Under the pieces are notes generated by a model. That model did no database searches. It saw only the letters and a program-made list of their open reading frames with translations, and was not told where the DNA came from. This document shows, piece by piece, positions 12,133 through 45,393 of a stretch of 64,000 nt of DNA (within the stretch, counting starts at the first letter, position 1; the number at the start of each line of letters is the position of its first letter). The stretch spans positions 248,001 through 312,000 of the IMG/VR virus record IMGVR_UViG_3300009545_000018. One strand, written 5' to 3'. The position numbers were made by a program, and so were the translations under genes.

Positions 12133-12594
12133 ATGACAAAGTTTGCAGTCGATTACACAGGTGTTGAGAATAAAATCTATAAAAAAGCTTATAGACTTGC
12201 TGACGTCAAAGACCAACTTGAGACCGTAGCATTTGATATTGTTAGATTTAAAGATCAAGATAAAGGGGCTGAACTTTGGCAAGTACAAAGTGCAGATGAT
12301 GGTGATTATATTGTTGCCATTTATGACAATGACGCTGAAGAAATGAAATCTGAAGCTGCTTGGGATGTTTTTGTTTCAAAAACAGCGGGAGATTTACAAA
12401 TTTCTTATAAAGGTGAACCGCTTGTTAAGGTAGCTGCATCCAAATTAGGAATTCCGGCAAAAGAATTACATAAAGTTTCTAGCTATTTACCAACAAAATT
12501 AGCTGAAAATAAAAAATTGGTAAATGCTTTATTAAATCAATTATCTCCATCAGCTAAAAAAGAGGTATTACTTAAGTACCCAGAGTTAGTTTAA
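12133..12594 (+). CDS. Hypothetical head-cluster protein
   Basis: GGAG RBS; several hydrophobic-x-K-x-A motifs. Confidence 0.7.
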   Translation: MTKFAVDYTGVENKIYKKAYRLADVKDQLETVAFDIVRFKDQDKGAELWQVQSADDGDYIVAIYDNDAEEMKSEAAWDVFVSKTAGDLQISYKGEPLVKVAASKLGIPAKELHKVSSYLPTKLAENKKLVNALLNQLSPSAKKEVLLKYPELV

Positions 12595-12609
12595 CAAATA
12601 GGACGCTAA

Positions 12610-14220
12610 ATGAGCCACGAAAAATTAAATCAACTAGTTGGTTTTATAGCTAAGAACCTGGATGATAATGAAAAATTAGCAACACCAGTTCTTGCTGCCA
12701 AATTAGCAAAATGTGTGGAAGCATTTCCCCATGATCAAACTGTTGGAGCAATTGCCACTGTTATCGATAAAATGGCAGTTAATAACACATTATTCATTCG
12801 TAAGGCTGATTTAAAGTCTCTTTATAATAAGCTTTACTCAAGAAATACTAAATTTGCAGAATTATTTAAAGATGAACTAGGATTAAAAGAGGAAGCTTCT
12901 TCTATTACTACTTATAAACGAGATGATGCTGTTGAAGTTAAAACTTATGAAGTTGCAGATCCGGTATTAGCAAACGCCTTAACTAGTGCTTTTGATAGTA
13001 GTGTTCCATTAAAAGAATATTCTCAAGTTTTAGCCACTAAAGCTCTTAAGTCAGTATCATCAACATTAAGTGGTTGGAATTTAAGACCAACTACACTTGA
13101 TATAGAAAATGGTAATGATAAATTTTTTGTATTAAAGGCTAATTATGAGACTCCAAAGGGCATTACTAGCATTTTAATTCCAGTAGAAGTTCATAATCAA
13201 AATGTTGTGGAAGCATCTTTATTTATGGGGAATACTGGTCCAGAAGAATTAAACCACGTTAATATTAAGAATTACTTAACAAGTGGTGTCGGATTAAAAT
13301 TAAAAGTTAGTGCAGCCAATGTTTTTGATGCATTAAATAATACTTCCATTAAAACTTTTGAACTTTCAGATGCAGAATTGGCATTAACTAAATTAAATGC
13401 TAAAAGAGAAGCTAATACAGAATTTTCTCAAAATCAAATTGTTGGTCAAGAAGTTGAACAAACATATAATGATGTTGTTCTTCCAGAACATCAAGACTTT
13501 ACTACTTTTGAGGCTCAATTGGAGAGTCCTCATGGTCAAGCTTATTGGCAACATGGTGCGGCTGTAACCGCAGGAATTTCTTATTTAAATAGAGAAATAA
13601 CTTCTTTTGGATTTAAAAACCCACAAATAGCAGTTGCTAAGAGTGATAAGAATACTGTTTACTACAGCGTAGCTGTTGATGGTGGAAGAATTGGATTTAC
13701 AGTTCCAATTAAAATTGCCAATAATAAAGTTATAATTCCAACTATTATGTTATGTAATGGAAGTGTGGCAGCATTTGACGCTAATACAATTAATAAATTA
13801 CGAGTAAATAATGCATCAGATTTTAAGGCGGCAGCTGTTGCTTCCCCACAATTTGCACTTAAACCAAGTGATCTAGTCAATAATATAAGAATTGCTCTAG
13901 CTGAAGGTAATCATTCTAAAGCAGAGGATGCTTTAAATGTATTATCTAATACTGGAGATACAAAAGCTTATGCGACTGGCTTTCAAATGTATTTAGATGG
14001 TTTAACTGGAAAAACAGCAGAAGTATCTACTGATAAAGAAGCTAAATGCTGTCTTATCATTAAGAGTGCTAATAGTCAACATCCAGTATGTGGTCATACT
14101 AATTTACCACTTCATAAGGTCTATCAAGATAAGCATGGAAATTGCTTACCTCTTTACAGAAGAGACATGGATGAGACCTATGATGGTGCAACATTCATGA
14201 ACTCCAAAATCTTTGGATAA
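12610..14220 (+). CDS. Hypothetical head-cluster protein with internal duplication and C-terminal Cys/His cluster
   Basis: ILIPVEVHNQNV vs FTVPIKIANNKV units; CC..HPVCGH..H..GNC. Confidence 0.7.
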   Translation: MSHEKLNQLVGFIAKNLDDNEKLATPVLAAKLAKCVEAFPHDQTVGAIATVIDKMAVNNTLFIRKADLKSLYNKLYSRNTKFAELFKDELGLKEEASSITTYKRDDAVEVKTYEVADPVLANALTSAFDSSVPLKEYSQVLATKALKSVSSTLSGWNLRPTTLDIENGNDKFFVLKANYETPKGITSILIPVEVHNQNVVEASLFMGNTGPEELNHVNIKNYLTSGVGLKLKVSAANVFDALNNTSIKTFELSDAELALTKLNAKREANTEFSQNQIVGQEVEQTYNDVVLPEHQDFTTFEAQLESPHGQAYWQHGAAVTAGISYLNREITSFGFKNPQIAVAKSDKNTVYYSVAVDGGRIGFTVPIKIANNKVIIPTIMLCNGSVAAFDANTINKLRVNNASDFKAAAVASPQFALKPSDLVNNIRIALAEGNHSKAEDALNVLSNTGDTKAYATGFQMYLDGLTGKTAEVSTDKEAKCCLIIKSANSQHPVCGHTNLPLHKVYQDKHGNCLPLYRRDMDETYDGATFMNSKIFG

Positions 14221-14222
14221 TC

Positions 14223-15119: not shown

Positions 15120-15128
15120 GGAGCACTT

Positions 15129-15845
15129 ATGAGAATTGCAGAACTATTAAATTCTATAGCATCTTGGCTGGAAAGTCCAAACAATGAAGCTTTATTATTA
15201 GCAGAATATGACGAAGAGTGTTTAAAAGTTGTAGCAGAGTCTTGTGTTGCTGCTGCCACCGCTTTAAAAACAGCTGCCATTGAAGTTGAAGCTATTGAGC
15301 CTTTACCAAAATCTGTTATCACACCAGAATCAATAGAAGAAATTGCGGCATTAGCCTCTGCGTTAGATGCCTCAGGTGATCCTTCCCTTATAAAACAAGC
15401 GTCAGTATTAGATGAATTATTGCTTACAGTGGCATCTCCCCCAAATGCTTTGCAAGATAAAAAAGCAGCTCAAGATAAAAAAATTGATGAATTAACAAAA
15501 AAGTATCATAGTGCTCAAAAAGAATTAGATGAAACTCATAAAATTGCAGATTCTATTAAAGATATTGAAAAAAGCAATATGACTAAAGAGTATAGAATAT
15601 TAGAAGCTCCACTTCAAACTAGAAGTTGTCCAGATCATAGTGGAGTACAAATGGCTAGGGTGGGAGATGATTTATGGCAGTGTGAATTAGATAAAAAAAC
15701 TTATTCTTATTCAAATGGTTATACATTAAATGATGGAACTAAAGTTCCAGGTGGTGATGTTGCTAATCAAACTCAAGGACTAGATTATACTACACATTCA
15801 ATCTTTGATACTCGTTCCGGGCGCTTACAAACAAATCAGGCTTAA
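15129..15845 (+). CDS. Hypothetical protein with C-terminal Zn-ribbon-like motif
   Basis: TRSCPDH...WQCELD; LASALDASG..LIKQASVLDEL hairpin. Confidence 0.7.
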   Translation: MRIAELLNSIASWLESPNNEALLLAEYDEECLKVVAESCVAAATALKTAAIEVEAIEPLPKSVITPESIEEIAALASALDASGDPSLIKQASVLDELLLTVASPPNALQDKKAAQDKKIDELTKKYHSAQKELDETHKIADSIKDIEKSNMTKEYRILEAPLQTRSCPDHSGVQMARVGDDLWQCELDKKTYSYSNGYTLNDGTKVPGGDVANQTQGLDYTTHSIFDTRSGRLQTNQA

Positions 15846-20783: not shown

Positions 20784-21434
20784 ATGTCAAAATATAATAG
20801 ACATCAATCAGTTGTTTCAAAACACTCTGATGCACAACAAGATGAAGACAATTGGATTAATAAATTAGAAAAATCTTTAATTAAAGATGCAGTTCAATCA
20901 CGTCAAGTTGATGATTATTTATTTCATCAAATAAATAATATAATGAATGGAACAAAGTCTAAATATTCAACAGTTGAAGAAGCCGTAGAAGATATGAAAG
21001 CTAGAAGTGGTTATAGCAATCATGTTACTAAAATGAATAAAGTTTCGGAAAATGAAGATAATAATAAAAAAGTTGCATCAGACTCTAATGAAGTAAAGTC
21101 TAAAAAATCATCTACACCAATAGTTATTCAAAAATGTCCACAAATTAAAAATACTTTAGAAAATTTTATAAGAGATACTAAAGGTAATGTATCTATTCCA
21201 GCAATTATTGAAAAAATAAAAAATATTCATGGTAAAGATATTTCTGAAGCTAAAGATTGGGATGAAGATAATTTTGTTAAATTAGTAAGTTATTTGAATT
21301 TAAGAGCAAAACAACAAAATCCTGCAAATTATGAAAATCATACTAATTTAGGGACGATGGATCAGACAATTAATGATGATGCAGACCCTTCAAATACAGA
21401 TGCATTTCATGCACTTATGCCCTTCTCAAATTAA
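20784..21434 (+). CDS. Hypothetical head-cluster protein
   Basis: 216-aa ORF. Confidence 0.7.
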   Translation: MSKYNRHQSVVSKHSDAQQDEDNWINKLEKSLIKDAVQSRQVDDYLFHQINNIMNGTKSKYSTVEEAVEDMKARSGYSNHVTKMNKVSENEDNNKKVASDSNEVKSKKSSTPIVIQKCPQIKNTLENFIRDTKGNVSIPAIIEKIKNIHGKDISEAKDWDEDNFVKLVSYLNLRAKQQNPANYENHTNLGTMDQTINDDADPSNTDAFHALMPFSN

Positions 21435-23884: not shown

Positions 23885-25693
23885 ATGCCTTTAGACAAAA
23901 CTGGTAAAAAATGGATAGGACCATCAAATTCGGAAAATTATTTAAATAGTAAATCTGAGGTCCCACAAGTTAGTGCTATTATGGCAAATAATATTTCTCA
24001 ATACAGAAAAGAAACTTTGGGAAAAGAAGTTGAAAGGGGATTATTTAGAGACGGTTCAAATAATGCTAAAACTTCTGATAATGAATTAACAGTTAATTCT
24101 AATGTTACATCATCAATTGGTGTGAATAAATTTGCTCAGGTAGTTAGTGGTGGTAGCGGAGGTTTTCGTGGTGGTATGGGAGATACTGTTAAACAAGGAC
24201 CAGAGGTATATTCTCCGCTTTGGTTAAATAGTAATTTAAACTTATCTCGTGATAGGGCTATAATTAATGCATGGTGTAGAAGTTTTTATGCACTTAATCC
24301 ATTTGTACATAATGCTATTAATCTTCATAGTACTTATCCAATTAGCAAATTAAATATTAAATGCCCAAATAAAAATGTAGAAAAATTCTTTAATGATATG
24401 ATTGAAGAAATTGATTTAATGAATATTTGTGTACAAATTGCACAAGAATATTGGTTATTAGGTGAAACTTTTGTTTATGCAGAATTAGATGAAAGTAAAG
24501 GAAAGTGGAACCGTTTAGTTATTCAAAATCCAGATCATATGTTAGTTAAAGCAACAGTATCTGCACATGAATCTATAATTATGTTACGTCCAGATAACAA
24601 TTTAAAAAGAATTGTTTTTTCTAATAAACCTTCAGATATTGAACAAAGAAAACAATTAAATCAACATATTATAGATTGTATTAAACGCGGTGGTGATATT
24701 CCATTGGATAGTTTTAATGTTTCTCATTTGGCTCGTAGAATTAGCCCGTATGAAATAAGAGGAACAGGATTACCAGTTTGTATATTTAGACAATTAATGT
24801 TATTTGATAAATTAAGAGAATCAAAATATGCTCAAGCTGATAATATGATTAATCCTTTAACATTAGTTAAAATTGGATCTGCTGATTTTAAACCAACCGT
24901 TGCAGATTTAGAGGCTTGGCGTCAAATATTTGAACAGGCACAAAATGATAAAGATTTTAAAGTTTTTACTCATGAAGGAGTAGATGTTACAAAAGTTGGA
25001 AGTGGCGCGGGCATTTATGATATTTCCGGAGATATTACTCAAATTATTAAAGAAATTTATGTTGGTTTGCAAGTGCCACCTGTACTAATGGATGGTGGTG
25101 CTGATACCACTTATGCTAATGGTGGCGTAGCGTTAGATGTTTTAAGACAACGCTATATGCAATTTCGTAATATGTTATCTGCTTGGTTAAAAAGAAAAAT
25201 TTTCGCACCTATTTCTAAAATTCAAGGATTTTATGAATATCATAATGGAGAAAAACAACTTATTGTTCCAGAAGTAGATTGGAATCATATGTCGATTTTT
25301 GATGCGGGTGATTATATTCAAAATTTAGTTACTTTATCTCAAGGACAAGATGATCAAAAGAGAGTATCATTACATACTTTATATAGATCTATGGGTCTAG
25401 AATATCAAGATGAAGTTAGAAAAATTAGAAAAGAAAGCATTCAAAATGCTATTTCTAAAAAAGAAAAAATATCTTTAGATAATATGGATTTAAATTCTTT
25501 GAGAGCTTTAGATGATGAGGATGAAATACCAGAAGCAGAAGCTTTGGTTGGTTCAGCGCCAGGTGCTGTTCCAGGAGAAAATCCATTATCATCTCCTTCT
25601 GCTGGTCCAGAGGCTCCACCTAGTGGACTTCCAGGGTTAGATTTATCGCCCCCTCCCTCAACTCCACCTCCTGGTACGCCCCCGGCACCATAA
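23885..25693 (+). CDS. Portal protein
   Basis: Follows terL; NPFVHNAINLH, EYWLLGE, HLARR.SPYEIRGTG; Pro-rich tail. Confidence 0.85.
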   Translation: MPLDKTGKKWIGPSNSENYLNSKSEVPQVSAIMANNISQYRKETLGKEVERGLFRDGSNNAKTSDNELTVNSNVTSSIGVNKFAQVVSGGSGGFRGGMGDTVKQGPEVYSPLWLNSNLNLSRDRAIINAWCRSFYALNPFVHNAINLHSTYPISKLNIKCPNKNVEKFFNDMIEEIDLMNICVQIAQEYWLLGETFVYAELDESKGKWNRLVIQNPDHMLVKATVSAHESIIMLRPDNNLKRIVFSNKPSDIEQRKQLNQHIIDCIKRGGDIPLDSFNVSHLARRISPYEIRGTGLPVCIFRQLMLFDKLRESKYAQADNMINPLTLVKIGSADFKPTVADLEAWRQIFEQAQNDKDFKVFTHEGVDVTKVGSGAGIYDISGDITQIIKEIYVGLQVPPVLMDGGADTTYANGGVALDVLRQRYMQFRNMLSAWLKRKIFAPISKIQGFYEYHNGEKQLIVPEVDWNHMSIFDAGDYIQNLVTLSQGQDDQKRVSLHTLYRSMGLEYQDEVRKIRKESIQNAISKKEKISLDNMDLNSLRALDDEDEIPEAEALVGSAPGAVPGENPLSSPSAGPEAPPSGLPGLDLSPPPSTPPPGTPPAP

Positions 25694-28468: not shown

Positions 28469-29196
28469 TTAATACTAATGATATTTTAAAATTAGCTAGC
28501 ACATATGAAGCAGTATGTGATGAATTATTAGCTATAGCCTACATTGTAAAAATGAAGGGCAAATATCGCGTAGTATCTGAAAAAGGTAAAAATTTAGGAG
28601 AATCAGACACTAGGGCAGGTGCTGAAAAAAGATTAAAACAAGTAGAATTTTTTAAACATAAAGATCATAATCAAGCAGATGATAAAGAATTAGATTTAAC
28701 TGATATTGAAGAATTTTCTTATTCCGCTATTGTACGCAAATTAAGACAAAAAGCATCAAAAGAGCAAGTTAAATTGTTTTTAACTTTATATAAAAAACAA
28801 TTTGATAAAGCAGTACGAGACAAAGTACAAAAGCCCGAAAAAATTGCATTACAAAATACCTTTATAAAATTTAAAAAAATAGTTAAACTTAAATATTCTA
28901 AAAAAATGATTAAAAATGCTGCCATTACTGAATTAGGCGATGCTGCTTCTGTTGGAGCCTATTTAGCTAATATTGTTAAATTTACTATTCAAAGAATTTC
29001 CCCCGAAAAAAGACAAGGTGCACTGGAAAGTTTAAAAAATAAACTTTATCATTTAAATGAAATAGAGCTATCTAATAAAAATTTACCAGCCTCAAGTTCT
29101 ATGGGTCAAAGTATAACATTCGTTAAGCATGTCTTATTTAATCATGATGCACAATACATTCGTGAAGTTATAAATAATCTAGTAAGGAATTTATAA
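28465..29196 (+). CDS. Hypothetical head-cluster protein
   Basis: Contains KYRVVSEKGKNLG..AEKRLKQVEFFKH module. Confidence 0.7.
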   Translation: MINTNDILKLASTYEAVCDELLAIAYIVKMKGKYRVVSEKGKNLGESDTRAGAEKRLKQVEFFKHKDHNQADDKELDLTDIEEFSYSAIVRKLRQKASKEQVKLFLTLYKKQFDKAVRDKVQKPEKIALQNTFIKFKKIVKLKYSKKMIKNAAITELGDAASVGAYLANIVKFTIQRISPEKRQGALESLKNKLYHLNEIELSNKNLPASSSMGQSITFVKHVLFNHDAQYIREVINNLVRNL

Positions 29197-30719: not shown

Positions 30720-30881
30720 ATGGCTTTTATAAAGCATGGTGATGGAAAAATAATGTCTGTTGTAGAAACAGAAAATCTTACTGAAGAGCAAAAAGAAACA
30801 GCTAAGAAAATTTCTGCTAACAATAGTAATAAATCTATAGAATCCAACGAAACTGATAACCAGGACGCTGGGAGAAATTAA
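30720..30881 (+). CDS. Small protein coupled to the protease gene
   Basis: MAFIKHGDG; TAATG overlap with 30881. Confidence 0.5.
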   Translation: MAFIKHGDGKIMSVVETENLTEEQKETAKKISANNSNKSIESNETDNQDAGRN

Positions 30882-33800
30882 TGTTTATAAAACTTGGTGA
30901 GTTAATAGAGATTAGTAGGATTGAAAATTCAGAATCCTGTATTCCTGCAGTAAGTGAACATATATTAAATGAATTTAAAAAATTTGCCACTAATTTAAAG
31001 AAAATCGCTCCTAAAGCTGAGGATTTTTTGTATTTCTCTGCTGTTATGATGCATGCAGCTGAAGCTGCCGGTATTAATGATGATGGTACTCCAAGATTAA
31101 CAGTTGCAGGAGAACCGGTTCAAGTAGGTTGGAATAAATCTGGTGGTACTTGGCGTTGGACAAGTAATGATCCTAATGTTAAGCCCTATAGAAATTCAAA
31201 TGGGGATATTTTTCCAGAAGAAGAATTAGTAAAGGCATATAAAAAGTGGGTAGGAAAACCTCTTTGCGTAGATCATAAATCAAGTTCAGTAGATCACGTA
31301 AGAGGTTTTATTGTTGATACCTATTATGATCGTAATTTAAAAAGAGTTATTGCTTTGTGTGCTTTAGATAAGGCAGGTTATCCACAATTAGCTAGACAGG
31401 TTTCTACGGGAGTATCTAACTGTGTATCTATGGGTACCGCAGTAGGTAGGGCAATTTGTAGTGATTGTGCCACTGTAGCCAGAACAGAACAAGATTTTTG
31501 TGATCATATGAGAAGAAAAACTTCTTATGGTGAAATTAACGTTGATCTAAATCCAATTGAACTATCAATTGTTGTAAATGGTGCTGATCCAAAAGCTAAT
31601 ATTAAAACCATTATTGCTGCAGCTAATACTTTAAATTCATATGTCGAAAGTAAAGCTAATGAATTAAAAAAGTTAACTGATAGACATTTTGTTGGAAAAA
31701 TTACAGTTAGTGATGGTGGCGGCGTTAATAATAAAGTTTCAGAGATTACTATTGATTCATCAGATTTAAATAAATTTAAGATTGATATGGAAGAAGCTTT
31801 TCAAAAATTACAAGAGATTAATGCTTCTGTAAATAATTCTGGAAAAGATACTAATGATCTTGCATTTAATCAATCGTCGGGATCTATTGCGATGGAAAAT
31901 TCCGCAACTCCCACAACAGATTCAGGATTGGCTCCACCTCACGAAAGATATGCTTCTGCTAACTTAGAAACAGAATCTATTAAAGAACTTCGTGAAGTTA
32001 CAAAAGTAATTGAACAAAAGTTGAGTCAAATGAAAGTAAGCATAGATAAGTTAGCAAATTCAAACACACAAGAGGAAAATATGTCAGGATCAGAGCTTAA
32101 TAAAAAAGGTTATTTTCAAGGAACTGAAGAGCCTAAACCAGGTCAAGTTCAATATCCAAAGGATCCAACCAATGAAAAGGTACGTGATTCTGAAGATAAA
32201 CACATGTTAGATCATGATGTAGGTCCAGTTGATGGATTACATCCAGGAGATTTAGAGCGCAAAAAAATGTTAGCTCGTGCAGAAGCTGAGGAAAGAGCTA
32301 TGCGTAGATCTGCTGTTGTTGATCTTGCTAAAAAGGCTTTAAAAAGTAAAGAAGCTTATTTCCAAGGCGGTGGTGGAGTAAACGAACCAACCCCAGGAAA
32401 AGTAAAATATCCTGCTGAAAAATTAAATGATCAGCTACGTGATCATGAAGATAAACAAATGGTAGGACAAAAACCATTTCCAGGTGTCGGATCAGTTGAT
32501 GGACTTCATCCAAGCCCCGATTCAGCAGATGTTGCTGACGAAAAGAAACGCAAAGAATTATTGCAAAGAGCTTCATTAAGAGCCAGATTCGTTAAAGCTG
32601 CTAATAATGATGGAACTCAAAATGTAGGCAAGAGTGCTTGGGAAGTGTTCTTAGGTGATAAATTACTATTAACTGCCTCAGTAAATGATTTATCTGGTAA
32701 TCGTGCAGAAATAATGTATGATAGTATTGCTACCAAAGAATTCGGTGCTAAATTAATTGAAAAAGTTAAAGTACAAGGCGCTGATAAAGTAAGTAGTTTA
32801 ATAAAGAGTGCTCAAGAACTTCCACCAGCAGCTCCTGCAGCTGAACCACCAGCAGCAGCTGATGTTGCTGCTCCTCCAGCTGATGCTGCACCAGCCGCAT
32901 CAGAAGATACGGGAGCTGAAGGTGATCCAAAAGCTAATGTAATGGAACTTTCTGAAAAAGTTAGAGATTTAGGATCTGATTTGGTTGAGGCTGTAAGAGC
33001 CTTAACTGGTGAACAAGCTGAAATGGGTGATTTAGAAGGTGGTATGGGAGCTACAGCATCTGATGTTAACTCTCTAAATACTATTAGAAAAGAACTAAAT
33101 TCAGCTTTAACTGATGCAATGAAAGAAACTGTTGCTGAATTAAATCAACATAAAGAAGAGTTAGATTTGATTGCAAGCTTGTATGATAAGGGAGCTGTTT
33201 CTGCATCCAATGAAACATTGGTAACTTCTGTTACTGATGACGTTATAAATGATGCTAAGAAATCAGTTGCAGAAGGATTTAATTTACTAAGTGCATTTGT
33301 CAAATATGCTCGTGGAACTAAAGCAATTGTCAAGCGCGCGGAATTTGAGGCTGAACTTGATGCATTAGCCGAGGGAGAATCTATGAAGGATGAGCATGAT
33401 AGTCACTCAAGTGACGATTTAATGAGTTTAATCCAAGACACTAATGCTGACTTGGATGCAGTTAAAGACATGATGGATGAAGGTTGTGATGGTGAATCTG
33501 AAGTATCTGATGCTGTTGATTCATTATCTGATGAAGTGGATGATAACAATTTAGATGCTAAACCAGAAGAGTTAAAAAATCTAGAAGTTAAGCCAGGAAC
33601 CGAAGTTCATGTTGTTGCTTCTACAGATTATGATAGCAAAGAAGGTCGTACAGCTCTACGTGCTAAGTTAGCTGCTGATGCTCTAAAAATTAGTCCATTA
33701 CTACATGATGCTCATCCAAAGGGTGGATTTACAACTGAGTTAGATGTTAAACCAGAAGGTGATTTAGCAAAAGTTGAAGATTTAGAAGAAGTTCATGATG

Positions 33801-34342
33801 CTATGATGGATGTTGCTCAAGCTCCACCAAAAGTACGTAAAGAAGCTGAAGCTATTAATAAATTAGTTTCAGAAGGTAAACTTGATGTTACTGATCTAGA
33901 TGCATTAGTTGCTGAAGGATTAGATAAAGATGCAGTTTCTTATTATAAGAAATTCTATAGTCAAGTTGATGGTGGATCTGAATTTGCTAATGAACTTGTA
34001 AAAGAACATGCAAAAGCTGAATTAGAAGAACAACTAAATACCTTCAAAGTTAAAATGGCAAGAGCTTATGAATTAACTTACGATATGGTTTCTCGTGGAT
34101 TGTGTCATGATGACAGAGTATCCATTTCAACTCAAGTTGAAGAGATCATGAAGTTTAATGATGAATCTTTTGACTCACTAAAGAGAGTTGTTGCAAAGCA
34201 TTCTCCAACTGTTAAAGTTGCCGGTCGTATGCCACAAGTTGGTATGATTGGTTCTGGTGAAATTAATTCCGCAGAATCTGATGGTGACTTATTTAGTCAA
34301 TTATCCTCTGCATTATCAACCTCTAAGAAGAGAAACTTTTAA
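30881..34342 (+). CDS. Prohead protease (HK97/assemblin fold, Zn insert) fused to long scaffold region
   Basis: NSNGDIF, GKPLCVDH, VSMG, CSDC..CDH, ELSIV..GADPKA; about 900-aa acidic coiled-coil C-terminus. Confidence 0.85.
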   Translation: MFIKLGELIEISRIENSESCIPAVSEHILNEFKKFATNLKKIAPKAEDFLYFSAVMMHAAEAAGINDDGTPRLTVAGEPVQVGWNKSGGTWRWTSNDPNVKPYRNSNGDIFPEEELVKAYKKWVGKPLCVDHKSSSVDHVRGFIVDTYYDRNLKRVIALCALDKAGYPQLARQVSTGVSNCVSMGTAVGRAICSDCATVARTEQDFCDHMRRKTSYGEINVDLNPIELSIVVNGADPKANIKTIIAAANTLNSYVESKANELKKLTDRHFVGKITVSDGGGVNNKVSEITIDSSDLNKFKIDMEEAFQKLQEINASVNNSGKDTNDLAFNQSSGSIAMENSATPTTDSGLAPPHERYASANLETESIKELREVTKVIEQKLSQMKVSIDKLANSNTQEENMSGSELNKKGYFQGTEEPKPGQVQYPKDPTNEKVRDSEDKHMLDHDVGPVDGLHPGDLERKKMLARAEAEERAMRRSAVVDLAKKALKSKEAYFQGGGGVNEPTPGKVKYPAEKLNDQLRDHEDKQMVGQKPFPGVGSVDGLHPSPDSADVADEKKRKELLQRASLRARFVKAANNDGTQNVGKSAWEVFLGDKLLLTASVNDLSGNRAEIMYDSIATKEFGAKLIEKVKVQGADKVSSLIKSAQELPPAAPAAEPPAAADVAAPPADAAPAASEDTGAEGDPKANVMELSEKVRDLGSDLVEAVRALTGEQAEMGDLEGGMGATASDVNSLNTIRKELNSALTDAMKETVAELNQHKEELDLIASLYDKGAVSASNETLVTSVTDDVINDAKKSVAEGFNLLSAFVKYARGTKAIVKRAEFEAELDALAEGESMKDEHDSHSSDDLMSLIQDTNADLDAVKDMMDEGCDGESEVSDAVDSLSDEVDDNNLDAKPEELKNLEVKPGTEVHVVASTDYDSKEGRTALRAKLAADALKISPLLHDAHPKGGFTTELDVKPEGDLAKVEDLEEVHDAMMDVAQAPPKVRKEAEAINKLVSEGKLDVTDLDALVAEGLDKDAVSYYKKFYSQVDGGSEFANELVKEHAKAELEEQLNTFKVKMARAYELTYDMVSRGLCHDDRVSISTQVEEIMKFNDESFDSLKRVVAKHSPTVKVAGRMPQVGMIGSGEINSAESDGDLFSQLSSALSTSKKRNF

Positions 34343-35000: not shown

Positions 35001-35222
35001 ATGTTTAAAATCGGCAGTCATGCAGATGATATTGTTAGTGAAATGGAAAAAGAGCTAAAAGCTCATCATGTTGAAAACACATATGGATTCAATAAACTAG
35101 CTAAGGCTGCCGATTATTTAAACTCTGCTGCTTCAATTTTTGAAGATGCTAATATGCCAGAAGTTTCTGATAAAATTACTGAAATATTAAAAAATTTGGC
35201 AACTGAATTAAATTCAAAATGA
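35001..35222 (+). CDS. Small helical protein, paralogue of 35219
   Basis: AADYLNSAASIFED. Confidence 0.7.
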   Translation: MFKIGSHADDIVSEMEKELKAHHVENTYGFNKLAKAADYLNSAASIFEDANMPEVSDKITEILKNLATELNSK

Positions 35223-36517: not shown

Positions 36518-37618
36518 ATGACTTTTAAGCACGTTAAATTTGAAGATTCAGCAACAATGCGCTCTTTAATTAAAGTAGCCTATGCAAAGGGACTAATTAA
36601 AGACGATCCAACATTAATTAAGAATTCCTCTTTAGAAAAAAAAGCAGATTATTCTCCAAGTTTTAATTTAATGGAGAATATTATTAAGCTTTGTGCAGGT
36701 CTTAGAGAACAGGGCATGGAAAAATATGCCAATGATTTAGAGTCCAAATTTATGGAATATAAAAAGGCAAACTCTTTATATGAAACTTCTAAAGAAACTG
36801 GAGAGGATATTGTAGATCAAGCACATCCACAAGGCTCACATAAAGTTTCTGATGTAGATGGAGATGCTATAGTAGAAACTATTTTAGATCAACATTTAAA
36901 AATTGTTAATGTTGTTAATAAAAAACCAACTGGTAAATTGTCAAGTAACACAGATATTTTAAAAGCTGTTAAGAAAGTTGTTGCCCAACAATTATCAATT
37001 AATGATTATTTACAAAAAATGAAAAATAGTGCTAAAGCCGTTAATCAAGGCTTTCATAGCGCTTCAGTATTAACTAGACCAATAACTTTTGTTACAGGTG
37101 AATTATTAGATGCTGTTAATGATTTAAATAAAGACAATATTAGTTTTGAAACATTAAATAATATTTATTTACTGATAACAAACACAAGAAAAGAATTAGA
37201 GCCCAAATTAGGTGGTCTCACTGGATTAGAAGAAGATAAGTGGAGATTTATTGAACCACATTTGAATGAAATTCAGAATGGTGTTTATAAAATTCAAGAA
37301 CTAATAAAAAATCCTCCCAAGAAAGAAGAGCCTACAGTTAATCCTATAATCGATGCATTTAATAAGCAAATTAATATAGTATTATCTACGCTTGCCACTT
37401 GGTCCAATATTGTTCAAACTGATCCTAGCTCTACTTCCGAAGAAAAGGCAGCAGGCAATAAATGGATTAATGATAAAAAAATTAGTATTATGAATTTGAA
37501 AACAAGATTTGATGCTTTAGATGATGCTTCAAAACTTGAAGCCCTAGATGGACAAAAACGTCGTTTACAAGAAATCACGGCAGAATTTCCTGAATTTAAA
37601 AAAACTTGGATAGACTAA
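36518..37618 (+). CDS. Hypothetical inner-head candidate
   Basis: AHP module; KxA motifs. Confidence 0.7.
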   Translation: MTFKHVKFEDSATMRSLIKVAYAKGLIKDDPTLIKNSSLEKKADYSPSFNLMENIIKLCAGLREQGMEKYANDLESKFMEYKKANSLYETSKETGEDIVDQAHPQGSHKVSDVDGDAIVETILDQHLKIVNVVNKKPTGKLSSNTDILKAVKKVVAQQLSINDYLQKMKNSAKAVNQGFHSASVLTRPITFVTGELLDAVNDLNKDNISFETLNNIYLLITNTRKELEPKLGGLTGLEEDKWRFIEPHLNEIQNGVYKIQELIKNPPKKEEPTVNPIIDAFNKQINIVLSTLATWSNIVQTDPSSTSEEKAAGNKWINDKKISIMNLKTRFDALDDASKLEALDGQKRRLQEITAEFPEFKKTWID

Positions 37619-38703
37619 TGTCAAATAAAATAAAACTATTAAAAGAAGCAATAGAAAAATTAGCTGAGGTACCAAAGCGTGGACCTAAGCCAATTACAAC
37701 TTCTATTCCATCTAAAGGAATACCAGCTAAACATCCTGGTGGTATTATTCCTAGTTCTCATTTTACTTCAAAAACAATAAATAACCCTACTGTACGAGAA
37801 ATGCAGCTTTCTATGCAAGATTTAGCACAAGCTGTTATGTCTGATTCTCAATCAGCTACTATGTCTTTAAAAAATAAAGACGTATTAAATCCTGGCGCTA
37901 CTGAATCTGTTCAAAAAGCAAAAAAATCTTTTAATGATTTTATTGCAGAACAATATATGGGCGGTTTAGATGAAACAAATAAAGGGGTTGAATGGAATAA
38001 AGATTCTAGTGTTGTAAAATATCCTGATAAACATCAAACACAAACTGATATTTATGAATTAGATGTTGTTATGAATACTTTAAGTAGGATTGGCTCTGAA
38101 AAAAGTGAATTTAAAGCTGATGGTAATTGGGACTGGAGAACAAATAATGCATTGAAAAATATGTTAGGATTTGCTTATGCTCTTTTACAATTAGAAGGCG
38201 ATTTTGGATTAAGTAATACTGTTTATAATATTTCTAATTGGCAAGATTTTAAAAATATTTTATCTAGTTACCGTGTAGAAGGAAATAGTGTTAATTTAGA
38301 TCCTCAAGATAAATCAGATAAGGCAGAAAAAATTACTAAACATTTAAAAGCTATCACTAGATTATATAATAATTTTAGACAACAAGTAATTGCCCGTCCA
38401 GAATACAGACCATTTATTGAAGGTAAGAGACCATTTGATCAATATGATAGTCATGGGTCAAATAAAGATACATTAAATGAAGCTGAGCAACAAATGGCAA
38501 AATCTGATGTTACCAAGGTTGATGGTATTTCTTATATTGCACCTAGATTACCAGACAAAAAATTAAATTATGTTCCATTAAAAGCATTAAGTAGTAAAGA
38601 AGAATATTTGAAATGGATGCTAGATTACGCAGGTGTTCCAAATGAGGAAACTGCTTGGAAGATATTTAACAATATTATTAAACCAAAAATTGAGGCGATG
38701 TAA
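37618..38703 (+). CDS. Protein with degenerate peptidoglycan-binding motif
   Basis: VREMQLSMQDL ... ADGNWDWRTNNALK. Confidence 0.55.
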   Translation: MSNKIKLLKEAIEKLAEVPKRGPKPITTSIPSKGIPAKHPGGIIPSSHFTSKTINNPTVREMQLSMQDLAQAVMSDSQSATMSLKNKDVLNPGATESVQKAKKSFNDFIAEQYMGGLDETNKGVEWNKDSSVVKYPDKHQTQTDIYELDVVMNTLSRIGSEKSEFKADGNWDWRTNNALKNMLGFAYALLQLEGDFGLSNTVYNISNWQDFKNILSSYRVEGNSVNLDPQDKSDKAEKITKHLKAITRLYNNFRQQVIARPEYRPFIEGKRPFDQYDSHGSNKDTLNEAEQQMAKSDVTKVDGISYIAPRLPDKKLNYVPLKALSSKEEYLKWMLDYAGVPNEETAWKIFNNIIKPKIEAM

Positions 38704-40265: not shown

Positions 40266-41377
40266 TGTCAAGTAACAGTGAAATTAGATTTTATACAGAT
40301 GCAATGATAGTTGAAACATTATTATCAGATATTGAAATTTATAAAAAAGCTGATGCTGGAACAATATCTCAACTTACTGATTCTGTTAAAAATTATGTTT
40401 CAAATCATATTGATCCAGAAGATCGTACTGGTAGTGTTCTTAATATGTTGGCGCCAGGTGCCATTTCTATGATGTTTAAAGCTATGGGTTTTGGCAAAAT
40501 AGGTTTATTGTTTGGTTTGGCAGCAAGTGTATTCCATATTGATGTTACTGGAATTTTATCATCTATTTATGATGAAATTAAATCTTTATTATCAAGTGGT
40601 AAACAAATAACTTCTTCACAAATTGATGGTTTAGTAAATTCTGCTGTTCAATCTCGCGGCGGAGGAGAAGCTGATTTATCACAAATTCAAACAGCTTCTA
40701 TACAAGAACAATTAAAAGATGTTAAATTTTTAAAAATATCTTTAATATCTTATGATAAAGATATTGTTAATATTGAAAAAAGTGCAGACTTTACAATAAC
40801 CTCTTCAAGAAAAGATAAGACACTCAATATTTTAGGAAGAGTATTAAGCTGGGTCTTTAAAATTGTTCTGTCGAGTGGTGGATTTATGGTTGCGGGCGAT
40901 GCAGTTAATAAATTTTTGGGTAGACCCAATGCTTTTGATGGAAGTATTAAAAATAATAAACCAGTAGAAAATACTGTAATAGAATCCATTCCAAGTAGCA
41001 CTCAACATAAATTTCCTCTTAAAGAAGGATTTATAGATACTAGATATAATATTGGAAATAATAATTGGATTGAAAAAATAAATAATAGTAAGTCTAATAT
41101 TGAAAATATGATAATTGGATTTGCAAAAGAAATTTATAATGGTTTAAATGGTCAAGAGTCTGTTATTAGAAATTCTTCTAAATTTCAAGATATTGTAGAA
41201 GAAATTACTTGGTATAATCATACTGTTGCGGGCGATCCAATTGTTTTTATACCAAAGAAATTTATTTCTAAAAAACAATTAGTAGATAATTTTATTGATG
41301 AAGTGGCGGCAAATTCAAACATTAAACCATCAAATAATTTACAAACAAACCTGCCACAAGGTGCTTATTTAACATAA
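40265..41377 (+). CDS. Protein with Gly-rich hydrophobic helices (ejection-protein candidate)
   Basis: MMFKAMGFGKIGLLFGLAASVFHI; ILGRVLSWVFKIVLSSGGFMVAG. Confidence 0.6.
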   Translation: MSSNSEIRFYTDAMIVETLLSDIEIYKKADAGTISQLTDSVKNYVSNHIDPEDRTGSVLNMLAPGAISMMFKAMGFGKIGLLFGLAASVFHIDVTGILSSIYDEIKSLLSSGKQITSSQIDGLVNSAVQSRGGGEADLSQIQTASIQEQLKDVKFLKISLISYDKDIVNIEKSADFTITSSRKDKTLNILGRVLSWVFKIVLSSGGFMVAGDAVNKFLGRPNAFDGSIKNNKPVENTVIESIPSSTQHKFPLKEGFIDTRYNIGNNNWIEKINNSKSNIENMIIGFAKEIYNGLNGQESVIRNSSKFQDIVEEITWYNHTVAGDPIVFIPKKFISKKQLVDNFIDEVAANSNIKPSNNLQTNLPQGAYLT

Positions 41378-41427: not shown

Positions 41428-42660
41428 ATGAGAAAATCAGATATATTTGAAAGTTTTGTCAAAATAGCCGAAGAAAAGGGATTAATCTCTAAGGATGCGC
41501 CAGATAAAGCTAAAGCTGCCTTGGAAAAAAATCCTAGAATGTCAGCATTAACTGCTGATGACATTACAAAATTATATCATGTTAAACCTGATGCTCCTAA
41601 AGGCATGGAATATGATAAAAATATTATGGAAATTGCTCATCCAAATTCAGTTGTAGTGTCACCATCATATGATAAATTAAATGGATTAGTTGAAAACAAT
41701 ATAGAAAGACAAAATATATTACTTCATATTGTTAATAAACCAACTGATGGATTAAGCATTAATCGCAAATATGCCGAAAAAGATTTAGTATTATCTTTAG
41801 TTAGTTTAGGTAATCATTTAGACAATGTCAATAAAGAAAATTTAAGAATATTAGCAGATACTTGTTTAACACAAGTTGCTGAAAAAACTATTGAAAAAAA
41901 GGCTTTAGCTCCATTGGCTTGGGCAGTTTTAGTGGGAGTTCCATCTTTAATTGGAGCTATTTATGCTCAACAACATCTTCCAAATATTGATCATGGATTT
42001 AGAGAAAATCATATCAAATTAATATCTGAATTAGATGATTTACTAAATTCTAATTCAAATTTTGGTGTTGGCTCTACTTATACAAAATCATTTATAGATA
42101 GTGTTTCTGATTTTAAAAATAAATTAGAAGAATTTTATTCTTTATATTATAAGAACCAAGATATAATTACTAAATTAGAAACTCCAAAAACTGCTAAAGA
42201 TCTAATTCAATTAGCATCAGAACCATCAGGTTCAAATGCGGTTCAGGCATATAATGAATTAGTAAAATCATTTGCAAACATCTTACCACTTATTAATGGT
42301 ATGGAACGTAATTTTAAATCTGAAAGTTTTAAATCTAGGCAAGTAGAAGATAAGGGATTTATTACATCTTTGATTGATAAAACTGAAATATTACATGGAC
42401 CTAATGGATTAATTGCAGATGATTTTCAAGATGTAGTTAATGCAATTCCTCCCTATAAAAAATCTGTACAAGAAATATTAAAAGTTTTTGCTGAAGCTCA
42501 AAATTTACAACATAAAGCCAAAGAAGATTTAGAAAGTGCTGCCACTGAATCTTCACAATTTATAGAGCCTTCTAAGTCAGTTACAGAAGTTGATAATGAG
42601 GCAGATGGCTTAGGTAAAGACCTAGAAGATCTGGGAAAAGAATTTCCAAATATTATATAA
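41428..42660 (+). CDS. Protein with AHP module and one hydrophobic helix
   Basis: IAHPNS; IEKKA-LAPLAWAVLVGVPSLIGAIYA. Confidence 0.65.
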   Translation: MRKSDIFESFVKIAEEKGLISKDAPDKAKAALEKNPRMSALTADDITKLYHVKPDAPKGMEYDKNIMEIAHPNSVVVSPSYDKLNGLVENNIERQNILLHIVNKPTDGLSINRKYAEKDLVLSLVSLGNHLDNVNKENLRILADTCLTQVAEKTIEKKALAPLAWAVLVGVPSLIGAIYAQQHLPNIDHGFRENHIKLISELDDLLNSNSNFGVGSTYTKSFIDSVSDFKNKLEEFYSLYYKNQDIITKLETPKTAKDLIQLASEPSGSNAVQAYNELVKSFANILPLINGMERNFKSESFKSRQVEDKGFITSLIDKTEILHGPNGLIADDFQDVVNAIPPYKKSVQEILKVFAEAQNLQHKAKEDLESAATESSQFIEPSKSVTEVDNEADGLGKDLEDLGKEFPNII

Positions 42661-43511: not shown

Positions 43512-43560
43512 GCTTTTATAATAACAAAAAAATATAATTAAATTATATAAAGCCATCAAT

Positions 43561-44262
43561 TTATTTTGATAGCTTTTTTAATTCCCAGACAAATTGGTAT
43601 GTTTCGCCATAATTTCTTTTTTTTAAATTAAATCTAATTTCTGGTGAAACATGATCATATCCATTATTAAATTCTGTATTTTCTAATACATTTTGTAGAT
43701 TTATTTCGTTTACAATCTGTAATCCACATTTTTCAATCATTTCTTTTAAAGAAAAATAAGTAAAAAATTTAATATGGGTTTTATCTAATAAACCAGTTTC
43801 CCTATAAGTGAATTTATTATTCCATAAGTCGATTAAGATTGCATTATGAGCTACATTTGGAATGGAAATCCAAATACTACCATTTTCTTTTAATAATGAT
43901 TTGCTTTTATTTAAAATTTCTTCTGGATTATGCAAATGTTCTAGTACATCAGCAAATATAATATAATCTAAATTATTTATTCCACAATTATAAACATGTG
44001 TAAAAAAATCATCTCTTTCTAAATCTCCCCAATATTTTCCATAAAATGATCTATCTGCCCATTGAGAGGCTTGTTTTCCAGCTTTTTCATTATGTTCAAC
44101 AATATAAACAGTACAATTTAAAGTTTCTTTTAAATATTTTGTCATTCTTCCATGAGCACATCCACATTCTAAAACAGAAGAATTAGGGATAATATTCTTT
44201 AATATTGTTGAATTAGAGTTTTCTGACCCCATATCTAACGTAAAATCGTACTGTGTTTCCAT
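43561..44262 (-). CDS. Class I SAM-dependent methyltransferase
   Basis: VLECGCAHG, DYIIFADVLEHL, SIPNVAH, GLLDKTHIKFFT. Confidence 0.9.
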   Translation of the reverse strand: METQYDFTLDMGSENSNSTILKNIIPNSSVLECGCAHGRMTKYLKETLNCTVYIVEHNEKAGKQASQWADRSFYGKYWGDLERDDFFTHVYNCGINNLDYIIFADVLEHLHNPEEILNKSKSLLKENGSIWISIPNVAHNAILIDLWNNKFTYRETGLLDKTHIKFFTYFSLKEMIEKCGLQIVNEINLQNVLENTEFNNGYDHVSPEIRFNLKKRNYGETYQFVWELKKLSK

Positions 44263-44382
44263 AAAAATTAATATAACTCATCTTTTTTTCATAAAAATAG
44301 TAATATTAAGTTATCTAATTAACGCACTTATGTGCAGCTGGCATTTTGCTGGCAATATTTCAAATAAATTAGTGGAGACACA

Positions 44383-45393
44383 ATGAATATGTTTAACAGC
44401 AAAGGCGAAATGAACGCCAGCTCTTTGAAAGATGCTTTAACTCAATTAGTTAAGTATGCTTCTATCCTAGAAGAGAATATGCCAGCTAACGCAGGTTTAG
44501 CCGGTCAACCATCAGTTTCTGATGACAAGCGTGATGAATTAATCTCTCGTGCCATTATGACACAAGATGGTAAAGTTGCTTTAGCTCAAGCTATGGCAAA
44601 CCCAATTCGTAAGAACTTAGATTACCACGGTATTGCTCGTAGAGCCTTAGTAGTTGATCCATTGCCACAAGGTGCAAATCCAACTTACGAACGCGATATT
44701 GACGTTGCTGCCGTAGTTATCTCTTCTAACGGAACTGGTCCAGAGTCTCGCGTATTCGGTGACCGTATCGTAGTTCCAGAATTCGAAATCTTTGCTAACC
44801 CAACTGTACGTATTGCTGAGGTTAAGAGACGTAGATTCAACGTAATTGACCGTGCTGTTCAAAAAGCTCGTCAAGAAATCATGGCACAAGAAGATGCTAA
44901 CATCTTTGCTGCCTTAGATGCCGCTGCTTCTGTTGAAAATACTATAACAGACGTTGCTGATGCTGGTCTTCTAAAGAGAGACTTAGTTGAAATTAAGCAA
45001 CAAATTGATCGTTGGGACTTGGTAACTACCAAGTACTTCATGAACATCTCTGAGTTCACTGATATCTTGAAGTGGGGTTCAGGTGGTGGTCAAGGTACTT
45101 CTGGTGGAGACTTCGATCCAGTAACAATGCGTGAAGTATTGCAAACTGGCTTGTATGCTCATATCTGGGGAACTGATATTATGGTATCTAAGATTGTCCC
45201 ACCTGGCACGATCTATGGTGCGGCCGATCCGGAGTTCGTAGGCGTCATGCCAATTCGTCAAGACATTGAAGTCTTGCCAGCTGATGAACCAAAACAACTT
45301 AAATTAGGTTGGGTTGTTTCTGAGATAATAGGATTGGCTATAGTTAACCCACGTAGTGTTGCAGCAGGTCGTAAGTCAACTACTGTCGCTTAA
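44383..45393 (+). CDS. Major capsid protein (HK97 fold)
   Basis: 336 aa after protease/decoration genes; strong codon bias; PIRKNLDY, PEFEIFANP, QEDANIF, GLAIVNPR; strong RBS and terminator. Confidence 0.85.
   Translation: MNMFNSKGEMNASSLKDALTQLVKYASILEENMPANAGLAGQPSVSDDKRDELISRAIMTQDGKVALAQAMANPIRKNLDYHGIARRALVVDPLPQGANPTYERDIDVAAVVISSNGTGPESRVFGDRIVVPEFEIFANPTVRIAEVKRRRFNVIDRAVQKARQEIMAQEDANIFAALDAAASVENTITDVADAGLLKRDLVEIKQQIDRWDLVTTKYFMNISEFTDILKWGSGGGQGTSGGDFDPVTMREVLQTGLYAHIWGTDIMVSKIVPPGTIYGAADPEFVGVMPIRQDIEVLPADEPKQLKLGWVVSEIIGLAIVNPRSVAAGRKSTTVA

What the first reader, a model, noticed from the sequence alone, without database searches (positions are those of the whole stretch)
12133..45393. 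Shared hydrophobic-x-K-x-A(/G) motif across about 20 head-cluster proteins: candidate Ala-specific maturation/cargo code
Seen: 12133 MTKFA, IYKKA, VSKTA, LVKVA; 15129 LIKQA; 15897 MNKTA; 19230 LLKTA; 19878 LVKEG; portal VNKFA-Q; 25762 MQKTA-Q, LLKLA; 28465 ILKLA-S, MIKNA; 30720 FIKHG; protease/scaffold FIKLG, FKKFA, IDKLA, LNKKG, FVKAA, LIKSA-Q, FVKYA, IVKRA, VRKEA; 34356 MEKTA; 35001 FNKLA; 35219 LVKVA-S; 36518 LIKVA, LEKKA; 37618 IEKLA; 38703 ITKRA-Q; 40265 IYKKA, IEKSA; 41428 FVKIA, IEKKA; MCP LVKYA-S. Copies often lie in the first 30 residues or at domain/charge boundaries. Known: T4 gp21 and phiKZ gp175 process many inner-head proteins but cut after Glu; herpes assemblin, which shares the fold, cuts Ala-Ser. 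Inference: this protease processes a large cargo set after Ala with Lys at P3, or the motif is a capsid-targeting tag. Caveat: K and A are common, and background hits exist (ssb VRKLA, primase FGKYA).
Basis: partly seen in the sequence, partly recalled or inferred. Interest (0 to 1): 0.85.

Follow-up and report, generated by a model that had tools for sequence, protein, structure and literature searches.

The report
Shared cleavage-type motif in megaphage head proteins
The head genes of this 448-kb phage, a relative of Bacillus phage G, share a short conserved signature (hydrophobic-x-Lys-x-Ala), most likely the recognition site of the phage's own head-maturation protease; its specificity differs from the Glu-directed proteases of T4 and phiKZ and could be tested in cultivated phage G.

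Summary
[ILVFM]-x-K-x-A occurs 47 times in the 33 ORFs of 12133-45393 against 19.2±4.3 in per-protein shuffles. Outside that region it occurs 9 times against 8.9. Of 16 hydrophobic/K/A spacings only this one is enriched, and only K and only A at their positions. Across the 448-kb genome the excess is confined to the head module. 21 of the 47 copies lie in the first 45 residues (6.5 expected).

In orthologues that are 22-63% identical, the motif K and A are near-invariant while the positions between them and the flanks drift. About 14-16 protein families carry conserved sites, including MCP, portal and the protease-scaffold. Terminase, tRNA nucleotidyltransferase and several others carry none.

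The 1153-aa protein at 30881 has an N-terminal domain with the T4 gp21/herpes assemblin fold (Z 10.1) and invariant His132 and Ser183. 136 family representatives carry the motif at 3.2x expectation, almost never inside the catalytic core. Phage G's head module shows the same signal.

Best reading: this is the recognition and cleavage motif of the prohead protease, and it marks propeptides and linkers. Cleavage itself is not shown, and the cut position (after Ala or after Lys) is unresolved. I rate it a new variant of a known kind.

The parts
30881..34342 (+). Protease-scaffold-like fusion protein (1153 aa). It has 11 h-x-K-x-A copies against about 3 expected: one conserved site (FKKFA, P1=36) just before the catalytic domain, none inside the core, and many in the acidic C-terminal 900 aa.
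   Evidence: PHROG head maturation protease, 1.6e-14. Site conservation 18-21 of 21 for P1=36, 644, 810, 820, 989 and 1018. In the family, 1300 motifs against 411 expected in 136 representatives, with 171 sites in the first 5% of length and 9 in the 10-20% core.
31013..31618 (+). Catalytic domain (residues ~45-246) with the T4 gp21/herpes assemblin fold. Candidate catalytic residues are His132 (nt 31274-31276) and Ser183 (nt 31427-31429). Cys193, Cys196 and Cys207 are invariant.
   Evidence: AF2 model pLDDT 85, core above 90. VIA-align: 5jbl_A Z 10.1, herpes proteases Z 7.4-8.4. D131, H132, S183 and M184 are invariant in 72 sequences.
44446..44460 (+). MCP site LVKYA (P1=Ala26), inside a 41-residue N-terminal extension that phage G gp27 lacks.
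   Evidence: Motif kept in 55 of 56 orthologues. Upstream peptide conservation 0.72 against 0.92 for the mature part. Alignment with gp27.
24122..24136 (+). Portal site VNKFA|Q (P1=84), N-terminal to the conserved portal core.
   Evidence: K conservation 0.99; motif kept in 48 of 68 (63 relaxed); P1' is Gln in 48 of 48; upstream conservation 0.45 against 0.77 downstream.
41455..41469 (+). w41428 (410 aa) N-terminal site FVKIA (P1=14). A second conserved site, IEKKA (P1=159), is at nt 41890-41904.
   Evidence: Kept in 47 of 51 and 40 of 51 (48 relaxed). Site 159 lies in the low-pLDDT loop 151-160 between two helices, ahead of the confident C-terminal domain.
40337..40351 (+). w40265 (370 aa) site IYKKA (P1=29). 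A second site, IEKSA (P1=174), is at nt 40772-40786.
   Evidence: Kept in 37 of 42, with K in 42 of 42 (flank identity 0.36); second site 23 of 42 (32 relaxed).
37651..37665 (+). w37606 (365 aa) site IEKLA (P1=20).
   Evidence: Kept in 24 of 30. K 0.87 and A 0.90 against flank 0.20 and P4/P2 at 0.13/0.20.
36566..36580 (+). w36518 (366 aa) site LIKVA (P1=21). A second site, MEKYA (P1=71), is at nt 36716-36730.
   Evidence: Kept in 11 of 13 and 12 of 13; 14 of 14 homologues have a motif in the first 60 aa.
35088..35102 (+). w35001 (73 aa) site FNKLA (P1=34). Its paralogue w35219 has LVKVA (P1=26) at nt 35282-35296.
   Evidence: Kept in 15 of 22 (20 relaxed) and 5 of 9. Alignment-free: 22 of 23 and 8 of 10. 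Paralogy E=1.5e-8.
25762..25776 (+). w25762 (413 aa) site MQKTA|Q (P1=5, with the initiator Met as the hydrophobic position). A second site, LIKDA (P1=74), is at nt 25969-25983.
   Evidence: Kept in 47 of 52 and 35 of 52; P1' is Gln in 45 of 47.
28906..28920 (+). w28465 (243 aa) internal site MIKNA (P1=152). The N-terminal ILKLA (P1=11) is moderately conserved.
   Evidence: Kept in 44 of 45, and 20 of 45 for P1=11; 40 of 46 homologues have a motif in the first 60 aa.
20877..20891 (+). w20784 (216 aa) site LIKDA|V (P1=36).
   Evidence: Kept in 35 of 49 (45 relaxed); P1' is Val in 35 of 35.
15387..15401 (+). w15129 (238 aa) site LIKQA|S (P1=91), at the end of an acidic N-terminal segment.
   Evidence: Kept in 27 of 27; P4 conservation 0.00 while K and A are 1.00.
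12133..12594 (+). w12133 (153 aa) with 4 copies (0.8 expected). Sites P1=19, 85 and 101 are retained in a homologue that is 46% identical.
   Evidence: Only two homologues were found, so this is suggestive.

Best explanation
The pentapeptide [L/F/I/M/V]-x-K-x-A is the substrate-recognition motif of the phage's own prohead (head-maturation) protease. That protease is the N-terminal domain, with the gp21/assemblin fold, of the 1153-aa protein at 30881-34342. Proposed mechanism, by analogy with T4, phiKZ and SPN3US: head proteins co-assemble with the protease-scaffold inside the procapsid. The protease then frees itself at the F-x-K-x-A36 site and cuts its own acidic scaffold tail at many sites so it can leave. 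It also removes short N-terminal peptides (5-36 residues) or longer N-terminal segments (up to ~90-175 residues) from MCP, portal and about 10 further head-cluster proteins. Conserved residues alternate with free ones (P5, P3 and P1 fixed; P4 and P2 free), as expected for a substrate bound as an extended strand. Shown here: enrichment, specificity, confinement to the head module, N-terminal and linker placement, conservation in orthologues, the protease fold, invariant His/Ser, and the same signal in the protease family and in phage G. Inferred: that the motif is cut at all; that the cut is after Ala (my preferred register, about 60:40 over a cut after Lys); and that the unannotated carriers are packaged internal-head or ejection proteins.
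For: Enrichment and specificity. Genome-wide locality. N-terminal bias, p=3e-7. Motif K and A are conserved +0.24 and +0.22 above the protein mean against ~0 for other K and A (Mann-Whitney p=2e-6 and 6e-6), with P4, P2 and flanks variable. Alignment-free test: 80-100% of homologues of MCP, w41428, w40265, w37606, w36518, w35001, w25762, w28465 and w30881 carry the motif in their first 60 aa (null ~10%). Terminase has 1 of 62, tRNA nucleotidyltransferase 2 of 43, and w19878, w27007, w28061 and w35798 have none. Protease fold: T4 gp21 Z 10.1, herpes proteases Z 7.4-8.4. Invariant D131-H132 and S183. Family-wide, 1300 motifs against 411 expected in 136 protease-scaffold representatives, with the same spacing and residue specificity, depleted in the catalytic core and enriched before and after it. 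The internal site 159 of w41428 falls in a low-confidence inter-helix loop ahead of the folded domain. The MCP site lies in an N-terminal extension absent from phage G gp27. Phage G head module has 29 against 11.7±3.4, gp19 protease has 7 against 0.7, and short N-terminal (K/S)RLxKx[A/S] tags occur in gp13, gp17, gp20, gp38 and others. Precedent: SPN3US A-x-E and T4 I/L-x-E motifs shared by many head proteins (PMC10052503, PMC12991175).
Against: There is no experimental evidence of cleavage for this phage or, in the papers I could read, for phage G. The 2020 JMB phage G paper was not held. Site 36 and some other sites are predicted helical rather than extended. A conserved copy at P1=43 of the protease is followed by an invariant Pro, and in the wider family its Lys sits one position off, so at least one 'site' is structural rather than a cleavage site. 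The phage G control region also shows a mild excess, 27 against 18.6, P=0.03. Proline avoidance does not separate the two registers. The orthologue alignments come from related metagenomic phages, so the counts are not phylogenetically independent.
Confidence: 0.68

Rival explanations
1. Same protease-substrate relationship but a different register. The bond cut is after Lys (h at P3, K at P1, Ala at P2'). This is a charge-reversed version of the T4 gp21 rule I/L-x-E|, not an Ala-specific cut.
For: T4 gp21, the closest structural match (Z 10.1), and the herpes proteases both place the hydrophobic residue at P3, two residues before P1 (I/LxE: PMC12991175; herpes V/L/I-x-A|S from my own knowledge). 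K to R substitutions are tolerated, with R 2.1x enriched at that position. Proline is almost absent between K and A (0.10), as expected for a P1' position.
Against: It would put the most invariant residue (Ala, replaced only by Gly or Ser) at P2', which is unusual. The constrained segment ends at Ala, with polar Q/S enriched immediately after (Q 4.6x, S 2.5x), resembling the P1' Ser preference of SPN3US and herpes proteases. A small-residue pocket at S1 is the assemblin precedent.
Confidence: 0.25
2. The motif is a capsid-targeting or scaffold/portal-docking tag that loads proteins into the procapsid and is not cleaved.
For: It lies at N-termini of many head-cluster proteins. T4 internal proteins use an N-terminal capsid-targeting sequence (cited in PMC12991175, ref 33).
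Against: Conserved copies also lie deep inside proteins (w41428 at 159, w40265 at 174, w28465 at 152, w15129 at 91, portal at 84). About 10 per protein occur in the protease-scaffold itself, while the catalytic core is depleted. That pattern fits self-processing, not docking. In T4 the targeting peptide itself ends in the cleavage site, so the two roles can coexist.
Confidence: 0.1
3. It is a compositional or structural by-product: Lys/Ala-rich amphipathic helices in head proteins of an AT-rich phage generate h-x-K-x-A by chance or by helix periodicity.
For: The genome is ~30% GC and Lys makes up 9.2% of the head-cluster proteins. Several sites are predicted helical. About a third of the copies are not conserved.
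Against: Per-protein shuffles never reach the observed count. Neighbouring spacings, which helix periodicity should also favour, are not enriched, and no other residue substitutes for K or A. K and A are selectively conserved while P4, P2 and flanks drift. The same pattern appears in 136 divergent representatives.
Confidence: 0.04
4. The motif is recognised by a different enzyme, such as a host protease or a Lys-modifying enzyme, rather than the phage prohead protease.
For: No direct link between this protease and the motif has been shown. Staphylococcal 80alpha uses a host protease for capsid and scaffold processing (my own knowledge).
Against: The motif co-occurs with this protease family across 136 representatives and brackets its catalytic domain. 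It is absent from distant relatives with the same MCP type but other proteases (PaBG, Rctr197k).
Confidence: 0.04

Closest known systems
T4 gp21 prohead protease and its I/L-x-E motif, including the capsid-targeting sequence of the internal proteins
   Same: Same fold (Z 10.1) with a Ser/His active site. One short motif is shared by MCP, scaffold and internal head proteins. Short N-terminal peptides end in the motif, and the enzyme processes itself.
   Different: The motif is h-x-K-x-A instead of I/L-x-E: basic and small residues instead of an acidic P1. Here the protease is fused to a ~900-aa scaffold-like tail. There is no detectable sequence similarity to solved structures.
phiKZ gp175 (S/A/G-x-E) and SPN3US gp245 (A-x-E) jumbo-phage prohead proteases
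   Same: A giant phage in which many head or ejection proteins, the portal and MCP carry N-terminal propeptides with one or several copies of one motif (PMC10052503, PMC5694885).
   Different: Those cut after Glu and are experimentally mapped. Here the motif has no Glu, nothing is mapped, and the MCP and protease are of the phage G type.
Herpesvirus assemblin (maturational protease, V/L/I-x-A|S)
   Same: Same fold (Z 7.4-8.4). The protease is fused N-terminally to a scaffold protein and releases itself. If the cut here is after Ala, both share a small P1 and a polar P1' (S or Q).
   Different: Herpes sites have a hydrophobic P3, and K/Q at P2 in the R site (my own knowledge). Here Lys is at P3 and the hydrophobic residue at P5. 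The herpes enzyme uses a Ser-His-His triad, and a second His was not examined here. It has only two sites per precursor, against about 10.
Bacillus (Lysinibacillus) phage G head module: gp14 portal, gp19 protease, gp27 MCP
   Same: Closest cultivated relative: MCP 54% identical, protease domain 33%, portal 33%. The same motif is enriched there, 29 against 11.7, including around gp19's catalytic domain.
   Different: The phage G protease is a stand-alone 300-aa protein. Phage G MCP lacks the 41-residue N-terminal extension carrying the site. The accessory head proteins are not detectably homologous.

Membership tests
Prohead serine protease of the gp21/assemblin fold (T4 gp21, HK97 gp4, herpes assemblin) | The characteristic beta-barrel fold | tested here: met
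   AF2 model pLDDT 85. VIA-align: T4 gp21 5jbl_A Z 10.1, rmsd 2.8 Å over 132 residues. PrV, HCMV, HSV-1 and EBV proteases Z 7.4-8.4. Foldseek probabilities 0.93-0.97 but weak E-values.
Prohead serine protease of the gp21/assemblin fold | Conserved catalytic His and Ser | tested here: inconclusive
   D131-H132 and S183 ('VSMG') are invariant in 72 sequences. The His-Ser spacing is 51, against 55 in T4 (H85/S140, PMC12991175). I did not obtain residue-level superposition on the T4 catalytic residues.
Prohead serine protease of the gp21/assemblin fold | Encoded in the head module between portal and MCP, next to or fused with a scaffold | tested here: met
   Order terminase (21962), portal (23885), protease-scaffold (30881), MCP (44383). 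The fusion length of 1100-1600 aa is conserved in most of the 150 best representatives.
Prohead serine protease of the gp21/assemblin fold | Proteolytic activity on head proteins | not testable with these tools
   Needs biochemistry or virion MS.
Protease cleavage motif shared by head proteins (T4 LxE and phiKZ AxE type 'maturation code') | Statistical over-representation restricted to virion and head proteins | tested here: met
Protease cleavage motif shared by head proteins | Positional conservation in orthologues despite divergent flanks | tested here: met
   Twenty-two sites are kept in at least 60% of orthologues.
Protease cleavage motif shared by head proteins | Mature N-termini mapping to the motif | not testable with these tools
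   No MS data were accessible. PMC7316594 is not held, and PMC12484599 has no supplements held and no mention of processing.

The most novel reading that the evidence does not exclude
The prohead protease of the phage G and megaphage clade has switched from the Glu-directed specificity of T4 and phiKZ-type phage enzymes to an Ala-directed rule (Lys at P3, hydrophobic at P5) that converges on herpesvirus assemblin. The same pentapeptide, placed after a 5-35-residue N-terminal peptide, acts as a general load-and-trim code that defines at least 14 internal or structural head proteins of half-megabase phages.
Probability: 0.4. Interest if true: 0.65.

Novelty: new variant of a known kind. Interest (0 to 1): 0.55.

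Why it matters
Almost nothing is known about how megaphages of 450-500 kb build and fill their capsids. A sequence rule that predicts which proteins are processed, and probably packaged, gives a genome-only way to list candidate head and ejection proteins in this large uncultivated clade: 1,643 protease representatives in public data. It would extend the known range of specificities of the gp21/assemblin protease fold. If the cut is after Ala, it would give a phage counterpart to the herpesvirus Ala|Ser rule. Phage G shows the same signal and is cultivated, so the prediction can be tested directly.

Tried and rejected
1. Megablast of the head module against GenBank phages found no match. Identification came from an MCP tblastn search.
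2. Sequence search of the protease domain against PDB sequences found nothing meaningful. The fold had to be predicted.
3. PHROG and Pfam scans of the putative cargo proteins gave no annotation, so 'cargo' remains an inference.
4. Literature: I found no report of a K-x-A rule. The key phage G structure and MS paper (PMC7316594) is not held. The 2025 phage G multi-omics paper has no supplements held and does not mention processing. I therefore cannot exclude that phage G cleavage sites have been published.
5. Distant relatives with the same MCP type (PaBG, Rctr197k, Tunturi_5) show no enrichment, except that the Tunturi_5 MCP has LLKSA at residue 21. The rule is clade-specific.
6. The proline and glycine profile around the sites could not decide the register.
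7. A PWM scan of the whole genome gave few convincing substrates outside the window. One candidate is the 1180-aa ORF that runs into the window start, with TKDLFKRA at P1=29. The PWM was trained on window sites, so the ranking is circular.
I re-ran it without that row.


Full report
CONTEXT. The window is positions 248001-312000 of a single 447,763-bp contig with ~30% GC. The region 21962-45393 is a head module. It encodes a large terminase (21962, PHROG 2e-58), a portal (23885, 5e-50), a 1153-aa protein whose residues 105-213 match 'head maturation protease' (30881, 1.6e-14), and a major head protein (44383, 1.3e-79). The nearest cultivated relative is Bacillus (Lysinibacillus) phage G: MCP 54% identical, portal and protease domain ~33%. 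IMG/VR holds hundreds of uncultivated relatives with MCP 87-98% identical on contigs up to 480 kb.

CONSERVATION. I built orthologue sets from 160 IMG/VR loci anchored on MCP and portal. MCP is ~90% identical across them, but the proteins between protease and MCP are only 22-63% identical. Twenty-two sites are retained in at least 60% of orthologues. The typical pattern is that Lys and Ala are near-invariant, the first position stays hydrophobic but changes identity, and the two x positions and the flanks are free. For example, w37606 site 20 has K 0.87, A 0.90, x positions 0.13 and 0.20, and flank 0.20. In w40265 site 29 the K is kept in 42 of 42. Relative to each protein's mean, motif Lys and Ala are +0.24 and +0.22 more conserved, against ~0 for all other Lys and Ala (p=2e-6 and 6e-6).

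An alignment-free test separates two classes. In the first class, 80-100% of homologues carry a motif in their first 60 residues, against a null of about 10%. These families are w25762, w28465, w30881, w35001, w35219, w36518, w37606, w40265, w41428 and MCP. w20784 and w15129 are at ~75%. w29929, w38703, w15897 and w29196 are partial. In the second class the families are at or below the null: terminase 1 of 62, w16655, tRNA nucleotidyltransferase w18470, w19878, w21454, w27007, w28061, w30693, w34356, w35798 and w42779. The portal's site is at residue 84, with K conservation 0.99. w12133 keeps 3 of its 4 sites in a 46%-identical homologue. About a third of the listed copies are not conserved and look like background. 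The carriers are not paralogues of one another, apart from w35001 and w35219.

THE ENZYME. An AlphaFold2 model of residues 1-300 of the 30881 protein (72-sequence alignment, pLDDT 85, core above 90) aligns best with T4 gp21 (Z 10.1, 2.8 Å over 132 residues). Four herpesvirus assemblins follow at Z 7.4-8.4, and the next fold class is at or below 6.6. D131-H132 and S183 ('VSMG') are invariant.

A search of 1.8 billion representatives found 1,643 relatives. Most of the best 150 are 1,100-1,600 aa long, so the fusion to a long acidic tail is conserved. In 136 full-length representatives the motif occurs 1,300 times against 411 expected (3.2x), and 96% of the proteins individually exceed 1.5x. The spacing and residue specificity are the same, and Arg is tolerated at the Lys position. 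Along the protein, sites pile up just before the catalytic domain (F32-x-K34-x-A36 is conserved), are almost absent within it (9 of 1,119), and recur about every 100 residues in the tail. This is the layout expected of an enzyme that frees itself and then dismantles its own scaffold.

A second copy at residue 43 is followed by an invariant Pro. In the wider family its Lys is displaced by one position, so I regard it as structural rather than a cleavage site.

SUBSTRATE ANATOMY. The MCP site (LVKYA, Ala26) lies in a 41-residue N-terminal extension that phage G gp27 lacks. The extension is less conserved (0.72) than the mature part (0.92). In a model of w41428, the conserved internal site at 159 falls in the low-confidence loop 151-160 between two helices, at the border of the confident C-terminal domain. 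The residue after Ala is conserved within families (portal Q 48 of 48, w25762 Q 45 of 47, w15129 S 27 of 27, w20784 V 35 of 35, MCP A or S) and is enriched for Q (4.6x) and S (2.5x) family-wide.

PHAGE G. Its 30-kb head module has 29 sites against 11.7±3.4 (P<0.001). A 50-kb replication and metabolism region has 27 against 18.6±4.1 (P=0.03). The 300-aa protease gp19 has 7 sites against 0.7, flanking the catalytic domain on both sides. Several small head-module proteins begin with (K/S)RLxKx[A/S] within 8-22 residues: gp9, gp10, gp13, gp17, gp20 and gp38. The portal gp14 has FQMAKQA at residue 20. More distant phages with the same MCP type (PaBG, Rctr197k) show no enrichment.

INTERPRETATION. 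The best-supported reading is that h-x-K-x-A is the recognition motif of the prohead protease. The alternation of fixed and free positions fits strand-like binding.

Two things remain inferred. The first is cleavage itself. The second is the register. A cut after Ala is favoured because the constrained segment ends there, Ala is replaced only by Gly or Ser, and Q or S follows. However, T4 and herpes enzymes place the hydrophobic residue at P3, which would put the cut after Lys, and proline avoidance fits both. A pure docking-tag role is unlikely given the internal sites and the roughly 10 copies in the scaffold, but docking and cleavage can coexist as in T4.

VERDICT. It is a new variant of a known kind of system, of moderate interest and directly testable in phage G.

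Noticed in passing
relatives only: P0009, P0015, P0021, P0032 and ~19 others; insertion after the residue equivalent to window 30881-protein residue ~103-106: About 15% of the best protease representatives have the catalytic domain split by an intein. P0009 has Intein_splicing (2e-13) plus LAGLIDADG (7.5e-13). P0015 has a mini-intein. The window copy has none.
   Followed up: partly
window 31457-31507 (residues 193-209 of the 30881 protein): Cys193, Cys196 and Cys207 are invariant and are followed by His209. They sit in a short insertion of the protease domain and may form a metal-binding site not described for T4 gp21.
   Followed up: no
window ~32096-32515 (residues ~406-545 of the 30881 protein): An internal tandem duplication in the scaffold-like tail: two ~55-residue segments each containing 'YFQG ... 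DGLHP'.
   Followed up: no
window 47892-52574 and 52574-55981: Two adjacent giant paralogous proteins (1560 and 1135 aa, up to 58-75% identical over internally repeated blocks). They are Lys-poor and higher in GC than their surroundings. Only weak DUF6286 and Barwin matches were found; they are probably fibre or surface proteins.
   Followed up: partly
window 27007-28068: The N-terminal ~180 residues match lytic transglycosylase domains of the baseplate-hub or internal-virion-protein type (PHROG 6e-19). The protein sits in the head module but carries no conserved motif.
   Followed up: partly
window 18470-19243 and 43561-44262 (- strand): Non-structural genes are embedded in the structural cluster: a tRNA nucleotidyltransferase, and a methyltransferase on the opposite strand wedged between w42779 and the MCP gene. 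The methyltransferase had no homologue in any of the 160 related loci.
   Followed up: partly
window 29929-30594: The ORF is called from a GTG. An internal ATG a few codons downstream gives MINRKA..., a relaxed (Arg) version of the motif that 24 of 35 homologues carry near their N-terminus. The true start is probably that ATG.
   Followed up: partly
genome 246219-249761 (runs into window 4-1761): A 1180-aa ORF upstream of the claimed region has a high-scoring N-terminal site, TKDLFKRA|KELG at residue 29. It could be a further substrate encoded outside the head cluster.
   Followed up: no
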